Shown here in pieces: positions 2,351 through 60,136 of a stretch of DNA of 64,000 bases. Each line of letters starts with the position of its first letter. Positions within the stretch are counted from its first letter, which is position 1. The notes beneath the pieces were generated by a model that saw only the letters and a program-made list of their open reading frames with translations, searched no databases and was not told the DNA's origin. The translations under genes and the position numbers were made by a program. This DNA is from Camelus dromedarius (lineage: Eukaryota). The stretch is taken from positions 186,001 to 250,000 of the forward strand of contig NC_087453.1 of the NCBI RefSeq assembly GCF_036321535.1, written 5' to 3'.

Positions 2351-2563
2351 TCATGGGCTCTGTGGGGAGCACAGGCTTCGATGCGTTGGTTGTGCCCCCG
2401 TCAGGCTCGTTCTCAGCCTCGCTCGTTCTTCACCCTGCTGCGTGGCCGCTGCACGCAGTGCGAAGAGCTTCTCCCAGCAGGTGGCGATGGCGTCCAGGGC
2501 GTGTAGCAGGAGCCACCTCCGGCCGCCTCGACGCCGGGAAGGGCGCGTCTGAGGCCGCCAGCT
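2351..2563 (-). CDS. C20orf204: C20orf204 last coding exon (70 aa + TGA)
   Basis: acaacag|AGC TGG; SWRPQTRPSRRRGGRRWLLLHALDAIATCWEKLF...SP*. Confidence 0.85.
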   Translation of the reverse strand, partial: SWRPQTRPSRRRGGRRWLLLHALDAIATCWEKLFALRAAATQQGEERARLRTSLTGAQPTHRSLCSPQSP

Positions 2564-4599
2564 CTGTTGTCGGAGACGCGTCGGTCAGGGAGTGGGCAGG
2601 GTCCCCAGGCCCACCCGCCCTCTAGTCCAGCCCTTGGGGGAGTCGCAGCACGGTGTGGGCCCGACTCACGCCCCCAGGCTGTGAGGCCATGGGGCTGCGG
2701 GAGCGAATGGGATGGGGGTCTCGGGGACGCGCACCTGGCGCAGCGTCCAGCAGTAGCGCTGCATCACCGCCTCGGTGCGCATGGCCACAGTCCATGCCAC
2801 TTTCTCCAGTGCCCGACGGCGGCCCCGGGCCACCGCCCCACGTAGGGTCCGACCCAGGGACAGGATGGACAGTAGGATGCTGTGCTCCTGGGAGGGGAGG
2901 AAATAAGCAACTGGAGGACGAGCCCTGTGAAGGGGCCTCAGGGGGACGGAGGGCTTGGGTGGGGGTGTCTCCATACCTTCTGGGCCCCACAGGAGGCTCC
3001 CACCCGGCCCCGCCGTCGGGAGGCCGCAGCTCCAGTCAGGTTTCTCTGAACGAAATGGAGGTGTCTGGAGCCCAGCCCCGTCCCTTCGGCCCCTGGCCCC
3101 ACCCACCTCGCTGCGGCCTGCAGGTCTTGGAAGATGACCGCCCGGTAGTGGCGGAGCACGTCGGGGACACTGCAGGTGCGGAGCCCGGCCCGGCCCTGTG
3201 TGGTCCCCAGCAGCACCAGCAGGAGTGCCCAGAGTGCAGGCTTGGGGGGCCCCTGCAAGGGACACCGGGTCAGGGTGGGGCACCCAGGCCTGTGGAAGGG
3301 GGCTTCCCTCCTGCAACACCCCAGGCAATGTGCTTTGGCCACCCCACCCCGACCACCCCAGAACAATCTGTGAGCTGGTATGGAGATATCACCATGCCAT
3401 GCAGCAAATGCTCTGGGTGTGGGTCTGGGTCTGGCAGGTTTAGGGAAGGATGGACAATGTCTGCACGCTGGACAGCTCAACTCATGCAGAGATCGCAGGG
3501 TGAATGCTGGGGGTCAGGAAAGAGACAGGCTTCCCAGGGCAGGAGCACCTGGACCTCTGGTCTGCACAGGTGTGAGGGCTCTAGTGCCCACAGGCCTGTG
3601 GAGGGCAGGGCTGGCTAGGTCTGGGGTAGCCATAGCAGTAAGTACCCTCAGCACAGCCTCGCCCCGGCCATGCCCTGACCCACCCCCACCGGAGCTGGGC
3701 CCTGAGCACCCTAATCCCCAGCACACTGCGGGGCCTTGGGTGCCCTGGGCAGTGGCTGCACGGCTGTTGCTCTGCCTTCGCTGCAGGAGAGCAGAACAGA
3801 CCTGCTCCCTTCTACCGCTGGGCAGCACCCCCAACCCAACCAGGACAGGGGTGAGGGCTCAGAGCTCAAGGCCACACCCCTTCAGAAGGGGAAGGCCTGG
3901 GGAAAGCCCGAGGCTAAGGGCGGAAGGGGCCATGTTACGCCTCACCAAACATTCCACTTGCAGACCTCCCCTCCCCCAGAATGGAGGGAACTGGCTCTCT
4001 GGGAAGAGACCCACCCTCAGCACAAGCCCAAACATCAAAGAGAAAGAGCCACGTGTCCCCGGCTCCCAGCACCCAGGCTGGACTCCACAGTGACCAGAAC
4101 ATTAATCATGTGAACCCAGTGAGACTCAGGACTCAGGCAAGGACTCGACTCTGCTTCCCAGCCCTGGCTGGGGAGCCTGACCTCACAGGACGAGAGCTGG
4201 GAGTCCGCGGGGGGGCTTCTGCCTGAGGCACCCAGAAGAGCAGATGCAATTGGCTGTGGCCAGGTCTTGAAACCCACGCACCCCCGCCCTGAGTCGCCCC
4301 TCTGCCTGCTGAGGGTCAGAGGTCACAGTGAGGACAAGAGCTGGAGATGCTGGAGGTGCTGTCCAAGTGGGGCAGCCTGGTTGACCAGGGAGTCCTGGGG
4401 AGGCCTGTCTGGCACCAGGAGGGAGTCTTCTCAACAGTGGTGGGAAGGCCAGGCAGGGGCCCCCAGGGCCCCCAGGGCCAGGCTTCAGTGACAGCAACCC
4501 AGGGGGATTTCCCAGTGGGGCGCCTCTCCCAGCCACACAGGCTCCCTGCCCCTTGGCCGGAGTAAGCCCCCTCCCCAGTAGCCCGCAGCTGCTCACCAT
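2351..4599 (-). CDS. C20orf204: C20orf204 (LINC00176) orthologue, predicted secreted protein, 214 aa; exons 4597-4599, 2977-3252, 2735-2887, 2351-2563
   Basis: Spliced translation MGPPKPALWALLLVLLGTTQGRAGLRTCSVPDVLRHYRAVIFQDL...EHSILLSILSLGRTLRG...ALDAIATCWEKLFAL matches recalled human C20orf204. All junctions GT-AG, phase 0. Syntenic position downstream of PRPF6. The ATG exon is inferred. Confidence 0.88.
2735..2887 (-). CDS. C20orf204: C20orf204 coding exon (51 aa)
   Basis: cag|GAG CAC ... CGC CAG|gtgcgc; EHSILL...YCWTLRQ. Confidence 0.9.
2977..3252 (-). CDS. C20orf204: C20orf204 coding exon (92 aa, includes signal peptide)
   Basis: ttgcag|GGG CCC CCC AAG ... CAG AAG|gtatgg. Confidence 0.9.
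4597..4599 (-). CDS. C20orf204: Putative C20orf204 start codon as the last 3 nt of an upstream exon
   Basis: ggcccATG|gtgagc is a strong donor directly after ATG; splicing to 3252 gives MGPPKP (recalled human MVPPKP). Confidence 0.55.
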
Positions 4600-7018: not shown

Positions 7019-44400
<37,382 letters not shown>

Positions 44401-52406: not shown

Positions 52407-52546
52407 NNNNNNNNNNNNNNNNNNNNNNNNNNNNNNNNNNNNNNNNNNNNNNNNNNNNNNNNNNNNNNNNNNNNNNNNNNNNNNNNNNNNNNNNNNNNNN
52501 NNNNNNNNNNNNNNNNNNNNNNNNNNNNNNNNNNNNNNNNNNNNNN
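52407..52546. other. Assembly gap (140 N), probably hiding the ZNF512B TSS
   Basis: Run of n inside the CpG island. Confidence 1.
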
Positions 52547-54632: not shown

Positions 54633-57600
54633 GTAAGAAGAGTCAGGCCAGGTGGTCATGGGCAGCGGGGCTGGGTCTGCACCTCCGTGGATGTCAGCTT
54701 CTAGGTGCCCAGCTGGCCGCCTGGGCTCCTAAGAAGCTTCCCAGGGTGGAGGCAGCCCAGGGTCCTGGGTTCTTATCCTTGGCTGCCTGTGGCCTCCTGC
54801 CCCCCATGCCCTGCTCCAGGCTTGACTAGCCCCCTGGGTGGCTAATGAGGCTGTGGGGAATGCAGCCTCTGAGCCTCGGTGTGTTGTGTGCTGCAGGGCT
54901 GCCGATGGTCCGGGGTGGGCAGACGGTGCCCAGTCAGGGCCCACTCTGCCTTGACTCCGGAAGTTCAGCCAGCGACAGGACAGAAGGGAAGAAAAAGGGG
55001 CGTCCAAAAGCTGAGAGCCAGGCCCTCCGAGACATTCCTGTGAGCTCCCTGAGGGCTGGGTGGGGCTCCTGGGGGGTCTGCCTGGCACGCCCGCTGCCTC
55101 GCCTCCTGCACGAGCAGCAGCGAGCCCTCAGCCTACATCAGCCGGCCGCTCTGTGTGTCAGGGCTTCAGGGCAGGGCCTGGGGCCTAGTGGATCGTGTCT
55201 GTGGGGCTCAAGGAACAGTCTGGTGCACTGAGGCTCCTCAGGGGGCCTGCCTCCTACTGTAATCCAGGGTTGCAGGGCTCTGGCCTGGGGAGGGCGCTGC
55301 AGAGGCCTGGGCAGCTGTGGGGTCAGCAGCCTGGCCTCTCCCACGCCCAGCTCTCCCTGATGAACCAGTGGAAAGATGAGTTCAAGGCGCACTCGAGGGT
55401 GAAGTGTCCAAACTCTGGGTGCTGGCTGGAGTTCCCCAGCATCTACGGGCTCAAGTACCATTACCAGCGGTGCCAAGGGGTAAGGGCTGCGGCTGGGGAA
55501 GAGGAGGCCTGGGGCCTGCCCTGCCCTGGCTGTGGGCTCAGGGGTGTCTGGGCAGAGGCCTGGGCACCCCACCCCACACCTGCCCTCTCCACCCAGGGTG
55601 CCATCTCAGAAAGGCTCACCTTTCCCTGCCCCTTCTGTGAGGCCGCATTCACCTCCAAGACCCAGCTAGAGAAGCACCGGATTTGGAACCACATGGACCG
55701 GCCTCTGCCTGCCCCCAAGCCTGGGCCAGTTAGCCGGCCGGTCACCGTCAGTCGGCCCGTTGGGGTCAGCAAGCCCATTGGAGTGAGCAAACCTGTCACT
55801 ATCAGCAAGCCTATCGGCATCAGCAAGCCAGTGACGGTCAGCCGACCTGTGACAGTCACCAAGCCAGTGACGGTCAGCCGGCCTGTGCCAGCCACTAAGC
55901 CAGTGACGGTCAGCCGGCCCATGCCAGTCAACAAGCCTATACCTGTCACCAAGTCTGTGCCAATCGCCAAGCCAGTGACAGTCACCAAACCGGTGCCAGT
56001 CACCAAACCGGTGACCATCAACAAGCCAGTGCCGATGACAAAGCTCGTGACAGTTACAAAACCCATGCCGGTCACAAAGCCGGTGACGGTCAGCAGGCCC
56101 ATTGTGGTCAGTAAGCCAGTGACGGTCAGCAGACCTATTGCCATCAGCAGACACACACCGCCCTGCAAGATGGTGCTGCTGACCAAGTCTGAGAACAAGG
56201 CTCCTCGAGCCGCGGGGAGGAGCAGCGGTAAGAAAAGGTACGGGGGCTCCTACTGAGTTGGGGTTGGTGCCTCCAGCTGCAGCCTGGGGGTCACAGGGCC
56301 CAGAGTGGACTCTCCTGTCCCTCACCTCCCTGCTCCCTGCAGGGCTGCAGATGGCCTGGATGCCTGCCCCATTCCACCCAAGCAGGCGAGGCCGGAGAAC
56401 GGGGAGTATGGCCCAGCCACCACCGGCCAGAGCTCGGCCCTCCAGCAGAGCACAGAATCCAGCAGCAGCCCCCTTTCTCTGGGCAGCAGGCCCTTGGGAG
56501 GCAAGGAGGCGCTAAGGGCCTCGGGCTCTGTGTCCCCGCCTGAGGAGGGTGCGGAGCGCACAAAGCACAGTAAGATGAGGGCGGGGGCCAGTGGCTGGGA
56601 CAGGGGCGGTGCCTCCCGATGGTTATTTGACCAGAGTCTTGGTCCCTGTTTTCTCTCCCCCGAGTCAGGAAGGAAACAGAAAACACCCAAGAAGTTTACA
56701 GGGGAGCAGCCGTCCATCTCAGGGACTTTCGGACTCAAAGGTGAGGCCTCAGGCCAGCCAGGCATCTGCGGGGTTCAGCACATGTACAGGTGTGCCGGCA
56801 CCCTTGGCCCACACCTGCTCCACCTACATGTGCACACAGGCCTAGCCAAGGCGGAAGACAAATCCCGCATTCACCGTGCCAAGAAGCAGGAGGGGCCGGG
56901 CCCCGAGGACATGCGGAAGAAGGTGCCGGCCCCCACCAGCGCTGTCAGCAAGGAGGTGCCGGCCCCTGTGGCCCACCCAGCCCCAGGTGGGGGCTGCCAT
57001 GTGGTGGGGCCCAGGCCAGGTCTCGACTGTGGGGCAGATCCTGAACCACAGGGACGGAGGCTGAGTGTGGGCCCTGAGGCTCTGGCTCTGACCCTACAGG
57101 TGGCCCTGAGGAGCAGTGGCAACGAGCCATCCACGAACGAGGTGAGGCTGTCTGTCCCACCTGCAATGTGGTCACCCGAAAGACCCTCGTGGGGCTCAAA
57201 AAGCACATGGAAGTGTGCCAGAAGGTAAGGCTGCCCCCGGAGTGCCGGGAAGGGGCACCCCGGGGCCAGCTTCTCACAGGTGGGTCCTGGCTGCAGCTGC
57301 AGGATGCACTTAAGTGCCAGCACTGCCGGAAGCAGTTCAAGTCCAAGGCCGGCCTCAACTACCACACCATGGCTGAGCACAGCGCCAAGGTACACCAGTG
57401 GGCCCAGCTGCCTTCCAGCCCCGCCCACTGACCGCTGTTTTCCGACCCACCCACCTGCCCAGCACTGACCACTCACCTCTCGTCAGCACACCACTGCAGG
57501 GCTTAGTGGCTCCCATACCTGACCGGGGATGCCCGTGCCCCAGCCGCGGGACAGGGGTCCTGTGGGGGCAGGGGGCACTGAGGCTGGGCCTGCCCCCTAG

Positions 57601-60136
57601 CCCTCGGATGCCGAGGCCTCAGAGGGGAGCGAGCAGGAGGAGCGGGAGCGGCTGCGGAAGGTGCTGAAGCAGATGGGGCGGCTGCGCTGTCCGCAGGAGG
57701 TCAGTGGGCAGCCCGGGTGTGGGCACCGTGTAGGATGCGGCCGACCCTCACTGGCCACTTACCTGACCCCGGAACCCTAGGGCTGCGGGGCCGCCTTCTC
57801 CAGCCTCATGGGCTACCAGTACCACCAGCGACGCTGCGGGAAACCGCCCTGTGAGGTGGAGAGCCCCTCCTTCCCCTGCGCCCACTGCGGCAAGACCTAC
57901 CGCTCCAAGGCTGGCCACGACTACCACGTGCGCTCAGAGCACATGGCCCCGGTGAGCGGCCGCAGCCCGGCTCCCCCATCCCTCGGGCACTGGGCAGACA
58001 TGTCCATCTGCTGCCTGCTGCGTTTGCAGTCCCTTCCCTTCCTGCCAGCCACCTATACCGGGGCAGTGAGCCTGGATGGGCCCCCGTGTCCCCAGCATGC
58101 TTGCTCATGTGTTCCCTCTCTGTGGCATGTGCCCCCAGTCCCCACACCTCCAAGCGCATGGCTCCTGTGGCTCACCTGGCCTCCTCACCCTGCAGCCCCC
58201 TGAGGAGCCCGAGGACAAGCCCTCCGAGGCTGAGGACCTGTTGGGTGTCGAGCGGACCCCCAGTGGCCGCATCCGCCGCACGTCGGCCCAGGTTGCCGTG
58301 TTCCACCTGCAGGAGATCGCGGAGGATGAGCTGGCCCGGGACTGGACCAAGCGGCGGATGAAGGATGACCTGGTGCCTGAGACCGCGAGGGTGAGCCACA
58401 GCCTCCTGGTCTCTGAGCAGGACATGCCCCAGCCTGAAGCCCCCTGTGACTGGGCTGTCTGCTCACCCCCTGGGCAAGCCTCCGGTCCATGGAGGACCCA
58501 GCTGAGGACTTTCTCAGAGCAGCTGGACATGTCGGTTGGCGCTCACACTGGTGCCCGTTGGCTTCTGCAGCTCAACTACACTCGGCCAGGCCTCCCTGTG
58601 CTGAACCCCCAGCTGCTGGAGGCGTGGAAGAACGAGGTCAAGGAGAAGGGCCATGTCAACTGCCCCAATGATGTGAGCTGGGGAGGCTGGGGTGGGCTTG
58701 TGGACACTGGGAGTTGGGATGGAGGGCCCAGATGTGGCCTGGAGGGGAGCCCTCCACGTGGCCCCCACAGGGGCCTCAGATGGAATCTTGCAGGCTGAGA
58801 GGCCTCGACCTCAGTCCTCATAGCCTGGCCTGCCCACACCTCATGACTCCTGGGGTCAAGCCTGCCACTTGCCCCAGAGGGACCCCAGGTCCCAAAGGCT
58901 GGAGCAAGGAGTGTCCATTTGTGTGGGGGTACCTCCAGGAAGGCCCTCCCCGATGGTTGCCCTTTGCCCCCAGTGCTGCGAAGCTATCTACTCCAGTGTG
59001 TCTGGCCTCAAGGCCCATCTGGCCAGCTGCAGCAAGGTCAGTCCACAGGCCCTCTCCTGGGCACGATGTGTCCTCAGTGCTCCCAGCTCCCCCTGGGGTC
59101 CCCACACATTGGGTGTGCGCCCTGCCCCTGTGGGGCTAATGGCCAACCCAGCCCAGGACCCGCACCACCCCGAGCCCTAGCTGTTGGCCAGTCAGTCCTG
59201 GGTTGTTGTCCCGCCATGGGGGTTCCTTGTCTGTACCGGGACAGGTGGGCACACCGACCTGGGCTTGGGGTGAGGGCATTCCCTGGGACACCTGCCTCTC
59301 CCTACCCTCTCCTCGTCCCTCTCCTCCCCCGCATCAGGGCAACTTGGTGGCCCTGCCAGAGTGGCTTTGTGGGTCCCTGAAGCCCGCCCATTGGCTACCT
59401 GTCCAGATAAGCTGCAGTTGCCCCTGATCCTGTAGCCAAAGGGGTAGGTGGGGGGTCCTGGCTACATCTGGGTACTTCTGGTCCTCCAAGGGCTGGGGTG
59501 GGCGCCAACCTCTGGGGCCAGACTGCCCCTTGCCTTCCAGGGGGACCACCTGGTGGGGAAGTACTGCTGCCTGCTGTGTCCCAAGGAGTTCGGCTCAGAG
59601 AGCGGTGTCAAGTACCACATCCTCAAGACCCACGCGGAGGTGGGGCAGGGACGGGGTCCTGGCGTGAGAGCCCTGCTGGGCCTGTGGCTAGACCAGTTGG
59701 CCCCATGGAGGGGCCAGGCTGGGTGAGGGGTGTCCGGGTGGCAGCTCGTGTGGTCTTAGAGCAAGTGGCATCTGGCTTCCCTGGAAGTGCTGAGAGGCTT
59801 GGGAGCCCCAGACCCTGGGTCCCCGGCCACTCAGCCCTTCGGTGTCCTCGGCCACAGAGTCTCTCCATCACTGCTCTTCTCTCCCAGAACTGGTTCCGGA
59901 CTTCGGCAGACCCGCCTCCCAGACACAAAGGCCTGGACTCTCCGGTGCCCAAGAAGGAGGAGAAGAGTCTGGCTGGTGGAAAGAAGCGGGGCCGCAAGCC
60001 CAAGGAACGGCCCCCTGAGGAGCTGGCACCCAGGACACCTCCTCGCCAGGACGACTGGCCCCCAGGAGGCAGAGACAAGGGGGCCCGGGGCTCCGCTGGC
60101 CGGAAGGTGGGAGCCAGCAAGGCACCTGAGAAGTGA
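54509..60136 (+). CDS. ZNF512B: Zinc finger protein 512B, 16 coding exons, 2679 nt, 892 aa
   Basis: Exon lengths 124,143,129,641,227,72,147,125,93,99,171,195,102,63,99,249 sum to 2679 in phase; MTDPFCVGGG...KAPEK*; C2H2/C2HC fingers, AT-hook-like KKRGRKPK, HRRKQKTPKK motif; matches recalled human ZNF512B. Confidence 0.98.
54897..55039 (+). CDS. ZNF512B: ZNF512B exon 3
   Basis: LPMVRGGQTVP...KKKGRPKAE...DIP|gtgagc. Confidence 0.94.
55351..55479 (+). CDS. ZNF512B: ZNF512B exon 4
   Basis: LSLMNQWKDEF...YHYQRCQG|gtaagg. Confidence 0.94.
55597..56237 (+). CDS. ZNF512B: ZNF512B exon 5 (C2H2 finger and hexapeptide repeat)
   Basis: GAISERLTFPCPFC...GKK AG|gtacgg. Confidence 0.93.
55720..56150 (+). 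repeat. ZNF512B: Coding 18-bp minisatellite, 24 hexapeptide units [K/R]P[V/I/M]x[V/I][T/S]
   Basis: aagccagtgacggtcagc occurs four times exactly; units counted from the translation. Confidence 0.92.
56343..56569 (+). CDS. ZNF512B: ZNF512B exon 6
   Basis: AADGLDACPIPPKQARPENG...RTKH A|gtaaga. Confidence 0.93.
56669..56740 (+). CDS. ZNF512B: ZNF512B exon 7
   Basis: RKQKTPKKFTGEQPSISGTFGLK G|gtgagg. Confidence 0.93.
56840..56986 (+). CDS. ZNF512B: ZNF512B exon 8
   Basis: LAKAEDK...VAHPAP G|gtgggg. Confidence 0.92.
57100..57224 (+). CDS. ZNF512B: ZNF512B exon 9
   Basis: GPEEQWQRAIHERGEAVCPTC...EVCQK|gtaagg. Confidence 0.94.
57297..57389 (+). CDS. ZNF512B: ZNF512B exon 10
   Basis: LQDALKCQHCRKQF...EHSAK|gtacac. 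Confidence 0.93.
57601..57699 (+). CDS. ZNF512B: ZNF512B exon 11
   Basis: PSDAEASEG...LRCPQE|gtcagt. Confidence 0.94.
57781..57951 (+). CDS. ZNF512B: ZNF512B exon 12
   Basis: GCGAAFSSLMGYQYH...CAHCGKTY...HMAP|gtgagc. Confidence 0.94.
58196..58390 (+). CDS. ZNF512B: ZNF512B exon 13
   Basis: PPEEPEDK...LVPETAR|gtgagc. Confidence 0.94.
58571..58672 (+). CDS. ZNF512B: ZNF512B exon 14
   Basis: LNYTRPGLP...VNCPND|gtgagc. Confidence 0.94.
58974..59036 (+). CDS. ZNF512B: ZNF512B exon 15
   Basis: CCEAIYSSVSGLKAHLASCSK|gtcagt. Confidence 0.94.
59541..59639 (+). CDS. ZNF512B: ZNF512B exon 16
   Basis: GDHLVGKYCCLLCPKEF...KTHAE|gtgggg. Confidence 0.94.
59888..60136 (+). CDS. ZNF512B: ZNF512B exon 17 coding part
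   Basis: NWFRTSADPPP...KKRGRKPK...KAPEK TGA. Confidence 0.95.
   Translation, partial: NWFRTSADPPPRHKGLDSPVPKKEEKSLAGGKKRGRKPKERPPEELAPRTPPRQDDWPPGGRDKGARGSAGRKVGASKAPEK

What the first reader, a model, noticed from the sequence alone, without database searches (positions are those of the whole stretch)
2351..4599. C20orf204 orthologue looks like an unrecognised TSLP/IL-7-family four-helix cytokine
Seen in sequence: a 214-aa spliced product with a hydrophobic signal peptide (ALWALLLVLLG), an N-glycosylation sequon (N72-L-T), four core cysteines (C28, C89, C139, C173), four amphipathic segments and phase-0 introns throughout. Compared with recalled human TSLP and IL-7: helix A C28-x8-Y-x3-I-x2-D-L (CSVPDVLRHYRAVIFQDL, 3121-3174) has the same spacing as TSLP CDFEKIKAAYLSTISKDL. 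SCGAQK|EHSILLSILSL parallels TSLP SCSNR|PHCLTEIQSL. Helix C VAMRTEAVMQRYC parallels TSLP FAMKTKAALAIWC with identical spacing. A basic loop is followed by helix D LLHALDAIATCWEKL, which parallels TSLP CLEQVSQLQGLWRRF and IL-7 LLQEIKTCWNKIL. As I recall the TSLP exon map, its introns also fall just before the helix-B xH motif and just after helix C, both phase 0, as here. C28-C139 would correspond to TSLP C34-C110. Inference: an ancient TSLP/IL-7 paralogue, possibly signalling through IL-7Ralpha, CRLF2 or an orphan type I cytokine receptor. I know this locus only as an uncharacterised or cancer-associated former lncRNA, and cannot check whether the cytokine link has been published.
Basis: partly seen in the sequence, partly recalled or inferred. 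Interest (0 to 1): 0.9.

Follow-up and report, generated by a model that had tools for sequence, protein, structure and literature searches.

The report
Overlooked IL-7/TSLP-like cytokine gene (C20orf204)
This camelid gene, known in humans only as a cancer-linked "former lncRNA" (C20orf204/LINC00176), encodes a protein conserved from skates to mammals. It has the hallmarks and predicted fold of a secreted four-helix cytokine, and its nearest detectable relatives are IL-7 and TSLP, so vertebrates may carry a cytokine that has not been recognised as one.

Summary
On the minus strand, four GT-AG exons (4599-4597, 3252-2977, 2887-2735, 2563-2351), all with phase-0 introns, give the 214-aa protein with the stated signal peptide, N72-L-T sequon and Cys28/89/139/173.

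It is the camelid orthologue of C20orf204. The family spans jawed vertebrates (skate, sturgeon, lungfish, amphibians, reptiles, birds, mammals) and lies directly downstream of PRPF6 in skate, ostrich and camel.

An AlphaFold2 model built on 65 orthologues (pTM 0.68) was compared with 48,161 PDB chains. Its 14 best matches are all helical cytokines: IL-11 Z 11.3, IL-7 Z 10.7, IL-6 Z 10.2, TSLP Z 9.2-9.3.

Profiles of the family hit IL-7 as the top PDB sequence in five of eight searches (best E 0.002, full length). No other cytokine ever appears. Pfam's TSLP model hits 8 of 65 members (best E 7e-4), below its curated cut-off.

The cytokine reading is therefore well supported. The specific IL-7/TSLP kinship is probable but sub-threshold. 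Receptor use is untested.

Published work calls the human protein nucleolar, yet reports EndoH-sensitive glycosylation, which implies ER entry. A 2023 paper noted "interleukin/growth hormone" resemblance. I found no paper making the IL-7/TSLP link.

The parts
4597..4599 (-). Coding part of exon 1: the start codon only, followed at once by a GT donor (gtgagc)
   Evidence: The upstream in-frame ORF has no earlier ATG. The ostrich orthologue shows the same Met-only first coding exon.
2977..3252 (-). Exon 2 (residues 2-93): signal peptide, helix A, AB loop with the N-glycosylation sequon, and the Cys before helix B
   Evidence: It matches the Vicugna model P0001 at 99%.
2735..2887 (-). Exon 3 (residues 94-144, 153 nt): helices B and C, phase 0 at both ends
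   Evidence: A 51-codon exon of the same size is found in ostrich and skate.
2351..2563 (-). Exon 4 (residues 145-214 plus TGA): basic CD loop, helix D with the invariant C-W-E-K-L motif, and a camelid-specific tail
3184..3252 (-). Signal-peptide-like N-terminus (residues 2-24; hydrophobic core residues 7-17)
   Evidence: hydropathy; conserved in orthologues. The human orthologue carries EndoH-sensitive glycan (PMC7969625).
3100..3168 (-). Helix A (residues 30-52), preceded by invariant Cys28 (3172-3174) and containing invariant Tyr37
   Evidence: AF2 model; conservation. It aligns to the IL-7 'KQYESVL' segment.
3046..3111 (-). A 66-nt, 22-codon insertion in the AB loop found in therians but not other vertebrates: a probable exonised ancestral intron
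   Evidence: Non-mammals have a phase-0 intron at exactly this point (alignment). The camel segment begins gcgagg, one change from a gtgagg donor, and ends ttcgttcag, which looks like an acceptor. Part of it falls in the low-confidence stretch of the model, residues 56-86 (pLDDT below 50).
3034..3042 (-). N72-L-T glycosylation sequon
   Evidence: Asn is present in 59 of 65 orthologues.
2828..2887 (-). Helix B, main part (residues 94-113); it starts at residue 88 in exon 2 (2977-2994), just before Cys89 (2989-2991)
   Evidence: The motif C-x-x-x-K-E-x-x-I-L-x-S-I is conserved and aligns to IL-7 'CDANKEGMFL'.
2735..2812 (-). Helix C (residues 119-144), ending near invariant Cys139 (2750-2752)
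2531..2563 (-). Arg-rich CD loop (residues 145-155 and onwards; the whole protein has 32 Arg and pI 11.9)
   Evidence: TSLP likewise has a basic cassette in its CD loop (PMC5382266).
2426..2530 (-). Helix D (residues 156-190) with invariant Cys173-Trp174 (Cys at 2477-2479)
   Evidence: It aligns to IL-7 'KTCWNKIL'.
2354..2440 (-). C-terminal extension found in the camelid models (residues 186-214, includes Cys209); most other orthologues sampled end about 25 residues earlier
   Evidence: Alignment. An identical tail is present in the Camelus ferus model P0057.

Best explanation
The locus is the camelid orthologue of C20orf204. It encodes a secretory-pathway protein of about 190 mature residues that folds as an up-up-down-down four-helix bundle, that is, a class I helical cytokine. 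I infer that two disulfides hold the bundle together: helix-A start to helix-C end, and pre-helix-B to helix D. It carries one N-glycan in the AB loop and a strongly basic CD loop. The family arose no later than the jawed-vertebrate ancestor. Its nearest detectable relatives are IL-7 and, more weakly, TSLP. The most likely mode of action is as an extracellular ligand made by epithelial or progenitor cells that brings together type I cytokine receptor chains. This would be an IL-7Ralpha-, CRLF2- or gamma-c-type pair, or a partner not yet assigned, signalling through JAK/STAT. Its very high positive charge probably keeps it close to the producing cell on glycosaminoglycans. Shown here: the gene model, conservation, synteny, predicted fold and remote profile similarity. 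Shown by others for the human protein: EndoH-sensitive glycosylation and partial ER localisation. Inferred: signal-peptide cleavage, secretion, disulfide pairing, receptor binding and signalling.
For: The gene model and its features are verified. Orthologues occur in placentals, platypus, turtles, birds, alligator, caecilian, newt, lungfish, sturgeon and skate. PRPF6 lies immediately upstream on the same strand in skate, ostrich and camel. The AF2 model from 65 sequences has pTM 0.68, with helix blocks at pLDDT of about 80-92. In the VIA-align search of 48,161 PDB chains all 14 top matches are helical cytokines. IL-7 scores Z 10.7 with 104 of 115 residues aligned. Mouse and human TSLP score Z 9.3 and 9.2, cover 105 of 109 and 98 of 114 residues, and show the highest identities among the top 20 matches (16-19%). 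Family profiles searched against 177,635 PDB sequences put IL-7 at the top with these E-values: 0.002 for the non-mammal profile (12-146 of 155 positions against 12-150 of 154 residues), 0.017 for the anamniote plus platypus profile, 0.031 and 0.088. No other cytokine appears in any of these searches. Pfam's TSLP model is the only hit in four muroid orthologues (E 7e-4 to 4e-3). It also gives collinear, near full-length hits in goose and sturgeon. Pfam's IL7 model hits 2 of 65 members. In the IL-7 alignments the family's Cys89 and Cys173 align with IL-7 cysteines, and Cys139 lies within 2 residues of one. Among protein-language-model neighbours, every top hit is a helical cytokine, and IL-7 is the best class I short-chain hit. 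The human protein shows EndoH-sensitive bands and partial co-staining with KDEL (PMC7969625).
Against: All profile hits are below the curated thresholds (TSLP 20 bits against a cut-off of 27). Placental-only, rodent-only and sauropsid-only profiles find nothing in the PDB. Foldseek finds no significant match apart from the protein's own orthologues, and its best TM-scores (about 0.5) are to G-CSF and IL-6. The top VIA match is IL-11. The predicted helices are long (23-35 residues), which is more typical of long-chain cytokines. The tool warns that Z below about 13 can arise from generic helical bundles. Language-model features score the IL-10 family and TPO (0.93) above IL-7 (0.88). Published experiments place the human protein mainly in nucleoli, bound to nucleolin and rRNA, and did not report secretion. 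A pI of 11.9 is extreme for a cytokine. I could obtain no RNA evidence for the camel splice junctions.
Confidence: 0.6

Rival explanations
1. It is a helical cytokine but not an IL-7/TSLP relative. It would be either a long-chain member near the IL-6/IL-11/G-CSF or GH groups, or an independent lineage of the four-helix cytokine superfamily whose weak IL-7 and TSLP hits reflect convergence in helix patterns and a short C-W-x-K motif.
For: IL-11 (Z 11.3), IL-6 (10.2) and CLCF1 (10.0) rank with or above IL-7 and TSLP. Foldseek's best TM-scores are to G-CSF and IL-6. The helices are 23-35 residues long, with a possible mini-helix in the AB loop. PROST aligned the human protein to somatotropin (PMC9992864). 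Language-model neighbours are led by the IL-10 family and TPO.
Against: No sequence profile, in either direction, ever reports an IL-6, GH or IL-10 family member, while IL-7 and TSLP recur. The IL-7 alignment is full-length and collinear. By my recollection, the positions of the four invariant cysteines match IL-7 and not the local disulfides of IL-6 and G-CSF.
Confidence: 0.2
2. Its real function is the published one. It would be an intracellular, arginine-rich nucleolar protein that binds nucleolin and rRNA and boosts rRNA synthesis, with the cytokine-like fold being incidental.
For: PMC7969625 reports nucleolar co-localisation with nucleolin and fibrillarin, pull-downs with nucleolin and 28S rRNA, and faster growth of transfected HeLa cells. 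The protein has pI 11.9 and 32 Arg.
Against: The hydrophobic signal peptide, four invariant cysteines and a sequon are conserved over roughly 450 million years. Those features are unexpected in a nuclear protein. The same paper shows EndoH-sensitive glycosylation and ER staining, which require translocation into the ER. Highly basic proteins often accumulate in nucleoli when over-expressed or when they fail to translocate (general knowledge). Non-mammalian orthologues have fewer arginines.
Confidence: 0.12
3. It is a secreted helical protein that has lost, or never had, receptor signalling. For example, it could be a glycosaminoglycan-bound or antimicrobial cationic factor, or a decoy or antagonist.
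For: The charge is extreme. TSLP itself is reported to have antimicrobial activity (title of PMC5039494, listed; not read).
Against: Surface positions on helices A, C and D are strongly conserved across vertebrates. That suggests a specific protein partner rather than function through charge alone.
Confidence: 0.08

Closest known systems
Interleukin-7 (PDB 3DI2/3DI3; Pfam PF01415)
   Same: Both have a predicted four-helix up-up-down-down bundle (Z 10.7, rmsd 3.2 A, 104 of 115 residues). IL-7 is the only PDB sequence picked out by family profiles, and the alignment is collinear: a Tyr in helix A, C-x-x-x-K-E before helix B, and T-C-W-x-K-[IL] in helix D. Cysteines sit at the helix-A start, before helix B, at the helix-C end and in helix D. 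The papers read say only that IL-7 has three disulfides, one of them joining the N-terminus to the end of helix C or the following loop (PMC7396566, PMC12810954). Both proteins have a signal peptide and N-glycosylation. Both genes are expressed in epithelial tissues; IL-7's expression is from general knowledge.
   Different: Identity is only about 14%. Pfam's IL7 model reaches just E 0.045 in 2 of 65 members. C20orf204 lacks IL-7's third disulfide, has longer helices and is far more basic. IL7 is on a different chromosome (human 8q21, from memory) from this PRPF6-linked locus (human 20q13.33). No receptor data exist.
Thymic stromal lymphopoietin (PDB 5J11, 4NN5; Pfam PF15216)
   Same: Structural matches cover nearly the whole TSLP chain (Z 9.2-9.3, 16-19% identity). 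Pfam's TSLP model is the sole hit in several rodent orthologues (E 7e-4 to 4e-3) and gives full-length weak hits in goose and sturgeon. The C-x8-Y spacing at helix A matches. A Cys ends helix C, as in TSLP Cys34-Cys110. The CD loop is basic and flexible, like TSLP's 127-131 cassette (PMC5382266).
   Different: Scores are below Pfam's cut-off (27 bits). Family profiles never retrieve TSLP chains from the PDB. TSLP's other two disulfides (69-75 and 90-137) have no counterpart. TSLP is known mainly from tetrapods (general knowledge), whereas this family reaches cartilaginous fish.
IL-6/IL-11/CLCF1/G-CSF long-chain cytokines
   Same: This group gives the highest raw structural scores (IL-11 Z 11.3, IL-6 Z 10.2, CLCF1 Z 10.0; G-CSF TM about 0.5) and has similar helix lengths.
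   Different: No sequence or profile signal appears in any search. By my recollection of those families, the cysteine pattern differs.
Somatotropin / 'interleukin variants and growth hormones' (PROST, PMC9992864)
   Same: This is earlier, independent computational evidence that the human protein resembles helical cytokines.
   Different: That paper chose growth hormone as the analogue and kept the nucleolar function. It did not point to IL-7 or TSLP, to the vertebrate-wide family, or to the secretory features. Here placental lactogen reaches only Z 7.8, and somatotropin and prolactin give TM 0.32-0.46 by Foldseek.

Membership tests
IL-7/TSLP group of class I helical cytokines | [quoted passage not shown] | tested here: met
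   The AF2 model has pTM 0.68 and helices at residues 30-52, 88-113, 119-145 and 156-190. The top 14 of 48,161 PDB matches are all helical cytokines, including IL-7 and TSLP. This is a prediction, not a solved structure.
IL-7/TSLP group of class I helical cytokines | Score above the curated Pfam gathering threshold for PF01415 (IL7) or PF15216 (TSLP) | tested here: not met
   The best TSLP score is 20.0 bits against a cut-off of 27. IL7 reaches E 0.045 in 2 of 65 members. The window's own protein gets neither hit.
IL-7/TSLP group of class I helical cytokines | Statistically supported remote sequence similarity by profile search | tested here: inconclusive
   IL-7 is the top PDB hit at E 0.002, 0.017, 0.031 and 0.088 with four profiles that include non-mammals. 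It is absent with three narrow profiles. The result is significant for a pre-named target and marginal database-wide. A profile-profile test could not be run.
IL-7/TSLP group of class I helical cytokines | Disulfide tying the N-terminal start of helix A to the end of helix C (TSLP Cys34-Cys110; IL-7 N-terminus to the end of helix C) | tested here: inconclusive
   Invariant cysteines sit at both positions (C28, C139). The literature basis is PMC5382266 and PMC7396566.
IL-7/TSLP group of class I helical cytokines | Signal peptide and passage through the secretory pathway | tested here: met
   The N-terminal hydrophobic core is conserved, as is the sequon. EndoH-sensitive glycoforms of the human orthologue are reported (PMC7969625). 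Release into medium has never been assayed.
IL-7/TSLP group of class I helical cytokines | Shared intron positions and phases with IL7 and TSLP | not testable with these tools
The family's own map is established: phase-0 introns after helix A (lost in therians), between K and E before helix B, and 5 residues after the helix-C Cys. No IL7 or TSLP genomic sequence was available.
IL-7/TSLP group of class I helical cytokines | Binding to IL-7Ralpha (with gamma-c or CRLF2) and STAT5 activation | not testable with these tools
   Neither complex prediction nor wet-lab work is possible here.
IL-6/gp130 long-chain cytokines | Sequence or profile similarity to family members | tested here: not met
   No IL-6, LIF, CNTF or G-CSF family hit appears in any Pfam or PDB-sequence search at E up to 10. 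There is structural similarity only.

The most novel reading that the evidence does not exclude
C20orf204 is a genuine third member of the IL-7/TSLP cytokine lineage and is as old as jawed vertebrates. It may be an ohnologue of IL7: as I recall, human 8q and 20q13.33 carry paralogous gene sets such as SOX17/SOX18, TCEA1/TCEA2 and STMN2/STMN3. It would be secreted by Wnt-active epithelial stem or progenitor cells and by some tumours. It would signal to lymphoid or epithelial cells through IL-7Ralpha, CRLF2, gamma-c or a receptor chain not yet assigned. That would be a previously unseen JAK/STAT axis hidden behind a 'lncRNA/microprotein' label.
Probability: 0.3. Interest if true: 0.95.

Novelty: new member of a known kind. 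Interest (0 to 1): 0.75.

Why it matters
The list of human class I helical cytokines has been treated as essentially complete for about two decades, and each member has become a drug target or a drug. A further conserved member next to IL-7 and TSLP would open a testable receptor-deorphanisation problem.

It would also recast the cancer literature on LINC00176/C20orf204. That literature reports HCC-specific expression, Wnt activation, and growth phenotypes seen only in vivo (PMC7580003). It also reports the gene as a marker of LGR5+ intestinal stem cells (PMC13533482). These findings could then be read in terms of paracrine signalling.

The family also gives a clean example of an intron turned into coding sequence, and of database annotation ('uncharacterized', 'lncRNA') hiding an ancient gene.

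Tried and rejected
- **First AF2 run:** the placental-only alignment (30 sequences) gave a poor model (pLDDT 63.5, pTM 0.29) and a meaningless Foldseek result. I discarded it.
- **Foldseek on the good model:** searches against PDB, AFDB Swiss-Prot and AFDB clusters gave only self-family hits as significant. The ESM-Atlas shape search returned bacterial transporters and ferritin-like proteins with TM below 0.5, which is uninformative.
- **Narrow profiles:** placental-only, rodent-only and sauropsid-only profiles found no cytokine in the PDB sequences.
- **RNA-seq support for the camel splice junctions:** The junctions therefore rest on GT-AG and phase consistency and on agreement with RefSeq-type models of other species.
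- **Profile-profile comparison (hhalign) against IL-7 and TSLP alignments:** not possible, because no tool supplied those sequences and I did not type them from memory.
- **Cys-Cys distances in the model:** not measurable, because coordinates are not exposed.
- **TSLP and IL7 exon maps:** no paper was found by search.
- **Literature searches for a published IL-7/TSLP link or a renamed gene:** nothing found.
- **Earlier-findings look-up:** it returned only an unrelated note on a PRPF6 intron.
Full report
**Observation.** On the minus strand the coding exons are 4599-4597 (ATG only), 3252-2977, 2887-2735 and 2563-2351. Every intron is GT-AG and phase 0, and the product is 214 aa. The hydrophobic core ALWALLLVLLG (residues 7-17), the N72-L-T sequon and Cys28, Cys89, Cys139 and Cys173 are all present. 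A fifth cysteine (209) lies in a tail found in the camelid models. No in-frame ATG lies upstream in the exon-1 reading frame.

**Identity, age and synteny.** Exon 2 is 99% identical to the Vicugna pacos 'C20orf204 homolog' model, and the C-terminal tail is identical to a Camelus ferus model, so the window is camelid. A full HMMER scan of 1.84 billion representative proteins found 78 family members and nothing else. Exact look-ups name them as C20orf204 homologues of these species:
- platypus
- turtles
- owls
- alligator
- a caecilian
- a newt
- lungfish
- sturgeon
- a skate

A second search added many birds and rodents. None carries a Pfam domain. In the window, a PRPF6 N-terminal exon lies at about 42 kb on the same (minus) strand and ZNF512B-like zinc fingers lie at 55-58 kb. 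In both skate and ostrich, PRPF6 ends just upstream of the gene on the same strand. The locus is therefore a single orthologous gene kept in place since the jawed-vertebrate ancestor.

**Gene structure.** Mapping the ostrich and skate proteins onto their loci shows phase-0 introns at three places:
- after helix A (…Q-N-L | K-N-L…)
- between K and E or D just before helix B
- a few residues after the helix-C cysteine

The helix B+C exon is 153 nt in skate, ostrich and camel. Ostrich, like camel, has a first coding exon that supplies only the Met.

Therians lack the intron after helix A. At that exact point they carry a 22-25-residue insertion. In camel this is window 3111-3046. It begins gcgagg, one change from a gtgagg donor, and ends ttcgttcag, which looks like an acceptor. 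Sequences that look marsupial (species not confirmed) show both the spliced and the retained form, and platypus has a spliced isoform. I read this as an ancestral intron that shrank and became coding. Part of it falls in the low-confidence stretch of the model.

**Fold.** With only placental sequences AlphaFold2 failed (pLDDT 63.5, pTM 0.29). With 65 sequences spanning vertebrates, the mature domain gave mean pLDDT 75 and pTM 0.68. Most blocks of the helical core score about 80-92, and the AB loop is disordered. Foldseek found no significant match other than the human and mouse orthologues.

The exhaustive VIA-align search of 48,161 PDB representatives gave eight matches at Z of 8 or more, all helical cytokines, and the 14 best matches are all helical cytokines:

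| Rank | Match | Z | Coverage or note |
|---|---|---|---|
| 1 | IL-11 | 11.3 | |
| 2 | IL-7 | 10.7 | 104 of 115 residues, rmsd 3.2 A |
| 3 | IL-6 | 10.2 | |
| 4 | CLCF1 | 10.0 | |
| 5 | mouse TSLP | 9.3 | 105 of 109 residues |
| 6 | IL-23 p19 | 9.2 | |
| 7 | human TSLP | 9.2 | 19% identity |
| 8-14 | viral IL-6, leptin, IL-27 p28, LIF, IL-34, placental lactogen, a fish interferon | 8.3-7.8 | |

The tool warns that helical bundles can reach such Z values generically. Even so, a clean run of cytokines at the top of a library in which they are rare shows that the model has the cytokine topology. The ranking does not separate IL-7/TSLP from the IL-6 group.

**Sequence relationship.** Family profiles were searched against all 177,635 distinct PDB sequences:

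| Profile | Result |
|---|---|
| 13-sequence vertebrate-wide | IL-7 top, E 0.031 |
| 65-sequence | IL-7 the only hit, E 0.088 |
| 19-sequence non-mammalian | IL-7 top, E 0.002, 21 bits; positions 12-146 of 155 against residues 12-150 of 154 |
| 8-sequence anamniote plus platypus | IL-7 the only hit, E 0.017 |
| placental-only | nothing relevant |
| rodent-only | nothing |
| sauropsid-only | nothing |

The alignments are collinear and pair the family's conserved features with IL-7's:
- the helix-A Tyr
- C-x-x-x-K-E before helix B
- T-C-W-x-K in helix D

In the other direction, Pfam's TSLP model hit 8 of 65 members. It was the only family reported in four muroid orthologues (E 6.8e-4 to 4.3e-3), and it gave near full-length alignments in goose (E 0.073) and sturgeon (E 0.32). 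Pfam's IL7 model hit two members (E 0.045). All of these are below curated cut-offs.

No other cytokine family appeared in any of these searches.

Protein-language-model neighbours of the turtle orthologue are all helical cytokines. They are led by the IL-10 family and TPO (0.93). IL-7 (0.88) is the best once those families are removed. This supports 'cytokine' but not the specific clade.

**Cysteines.** Cys28, Cys139 and Cys173 are invariant in 65 sequences and Cys89 is present in 64 of 65. TSLP has Cys34-Cys110 joining the helix-A start to the helix-C end (PMC5382266). IL-7 has three disulfides, one of which ties its N-terminus to the end of helix C or the following loop (PMC7396566 and PMC12810954). 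In the HMMER alignments Cys89 and Cys173 fall on IL-7 cysteines, and Cys139 falls within two residues of one. I recall, without having checked, that those two IL-7 cysteines pair with each other. The four cysteines would thus reproduce two of IL-7's three bridges and only one of TSLP's. The pairing itself could not be measured because model coordinates are not exposed.

**Secretion versus the published function.** Burbano De Lara et al. (PMC7969625) describe human C20orf204-189AA as a nucleolar partner of nucleolin and rRNA that speeds proliferation. Reviews up to 2026 repeat this. The same paper shows that the 24 and 26 kDa forms disappear after EndoH treatment and that part of the protein co-stains with KDEL. 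That requires entry into the ER and fits the conserved signal peptide and sequon. The protein is extremely basic (32 Arg, pI 11.9), and such proteins often collect in nucleoli when they are over-expressed or fail to translocate. I therefore rank the nucleolar role as secondary or artefactual (0.12), not excluded.

**Expression context from papers.**
- LINC00176 (the same gene) names the LGR5+ intestinal stem-cell cluster in a paediatric Crohn's disease atlas (PMC13533482).
- It is classed as Wnt-activated and was a functional hit in vivo in a pancreatic cancer screen (PMC7580003).
- It was among the most up-regulated genes in bovine WC1.1+ gamma-delta T cells in tuberculosis (PMC10628470).

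An epithelial source would parallel IL-7 and TSLP. The link to function is my inference.

[quoted passage not shown] The general cytokine-like resemblance is therefore already in print. I found no paper proposing the following:
- the IL-7/TSLP kinship
- the gnathostome-wide family
- the secretory reading
- the exonised intron

**Verdict.** My estimates are about 0.85 for a secretory four-helix cytokine-like protein, about 0.6 for the full statement including specific IL-7/TSLP affinity, and about 0.3 for a genuine receptor-signalling cytokine of that lineage.

Noticed in passing
window 3046-3111 (minus strand): The therian AB-loop insertion (22 codons in camel) sits exactly where non-mammals have a phase-0 intron. 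It still starts with a near-donor (gcgagg) and ends with an acceptor-like ttcgttcag. It looks like an ancestral intron that became coding sequence.
   Followed up: partly
window 2354-2440 (minus strand): The camelid models carry a C-terminal extension of about 29 residues with an extra cysteine (Cys209). The Vicugna model runs on to 243 aa, whereas most other orthologues sampled stop shortly after the C-W-E-K-L-F-A-L-R helix. The cause (lost stop or frameshift) was not examined.
   Followed up: no
window 2561-2566 (exon 4 acceptor): The Vicugna model has one extra Gln at the exon 3/4 junction (…RQQSW…) compared with the window's …RQSW…. This is either a small acceptor shift or a sequence difference between the camelids.
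   Followed up: no
window 41941-42693 (minus) and 55195-58795 (plus): There is a PRPF6 N-terminal exon (Pfam PRP1_N, E 8e-7) and ZNF512-type zinc-finger ORFs. The window therefore matches the human 20q13.33 order ZNF512B - (SAMD10) - PRPF6 - C20orf204. PRPF6 occupies most of the interval between about 5 and 42 kb.
   Followed up: partly
window 11054-11206 and 52407-52546: Two runs of N (153 and 140 bases).
   Followed up: no
AFDB cluster entry E9QGK3: An unnamed 184-aa protein matches the model with Foldseek probability 1.00 and TM 0.56/0.52 at only 13% identity. It may be a divergent fish relative, since no teleost member turned up in the sequence searches. Its organism and name were not shown.
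   Followed up: no
database models P0002, P0015, P0034, P0055-P0057, P0059 and others: Many public gene models of this locus retain introns or read in the wrong frame. Some carry neighbours' names ('PRP6 factor' in hyena; 'transcription elongation factor A 2' in a turtle). This helps explain why the family stayed unnoticed.
   Followed up: partly
L001 19772-27656 and L002 13452-15208: The helix B+C exon is exactly 153 nt in skate, ostrich and camel, even though protein identity is only about 30%.
   Followed up: yes
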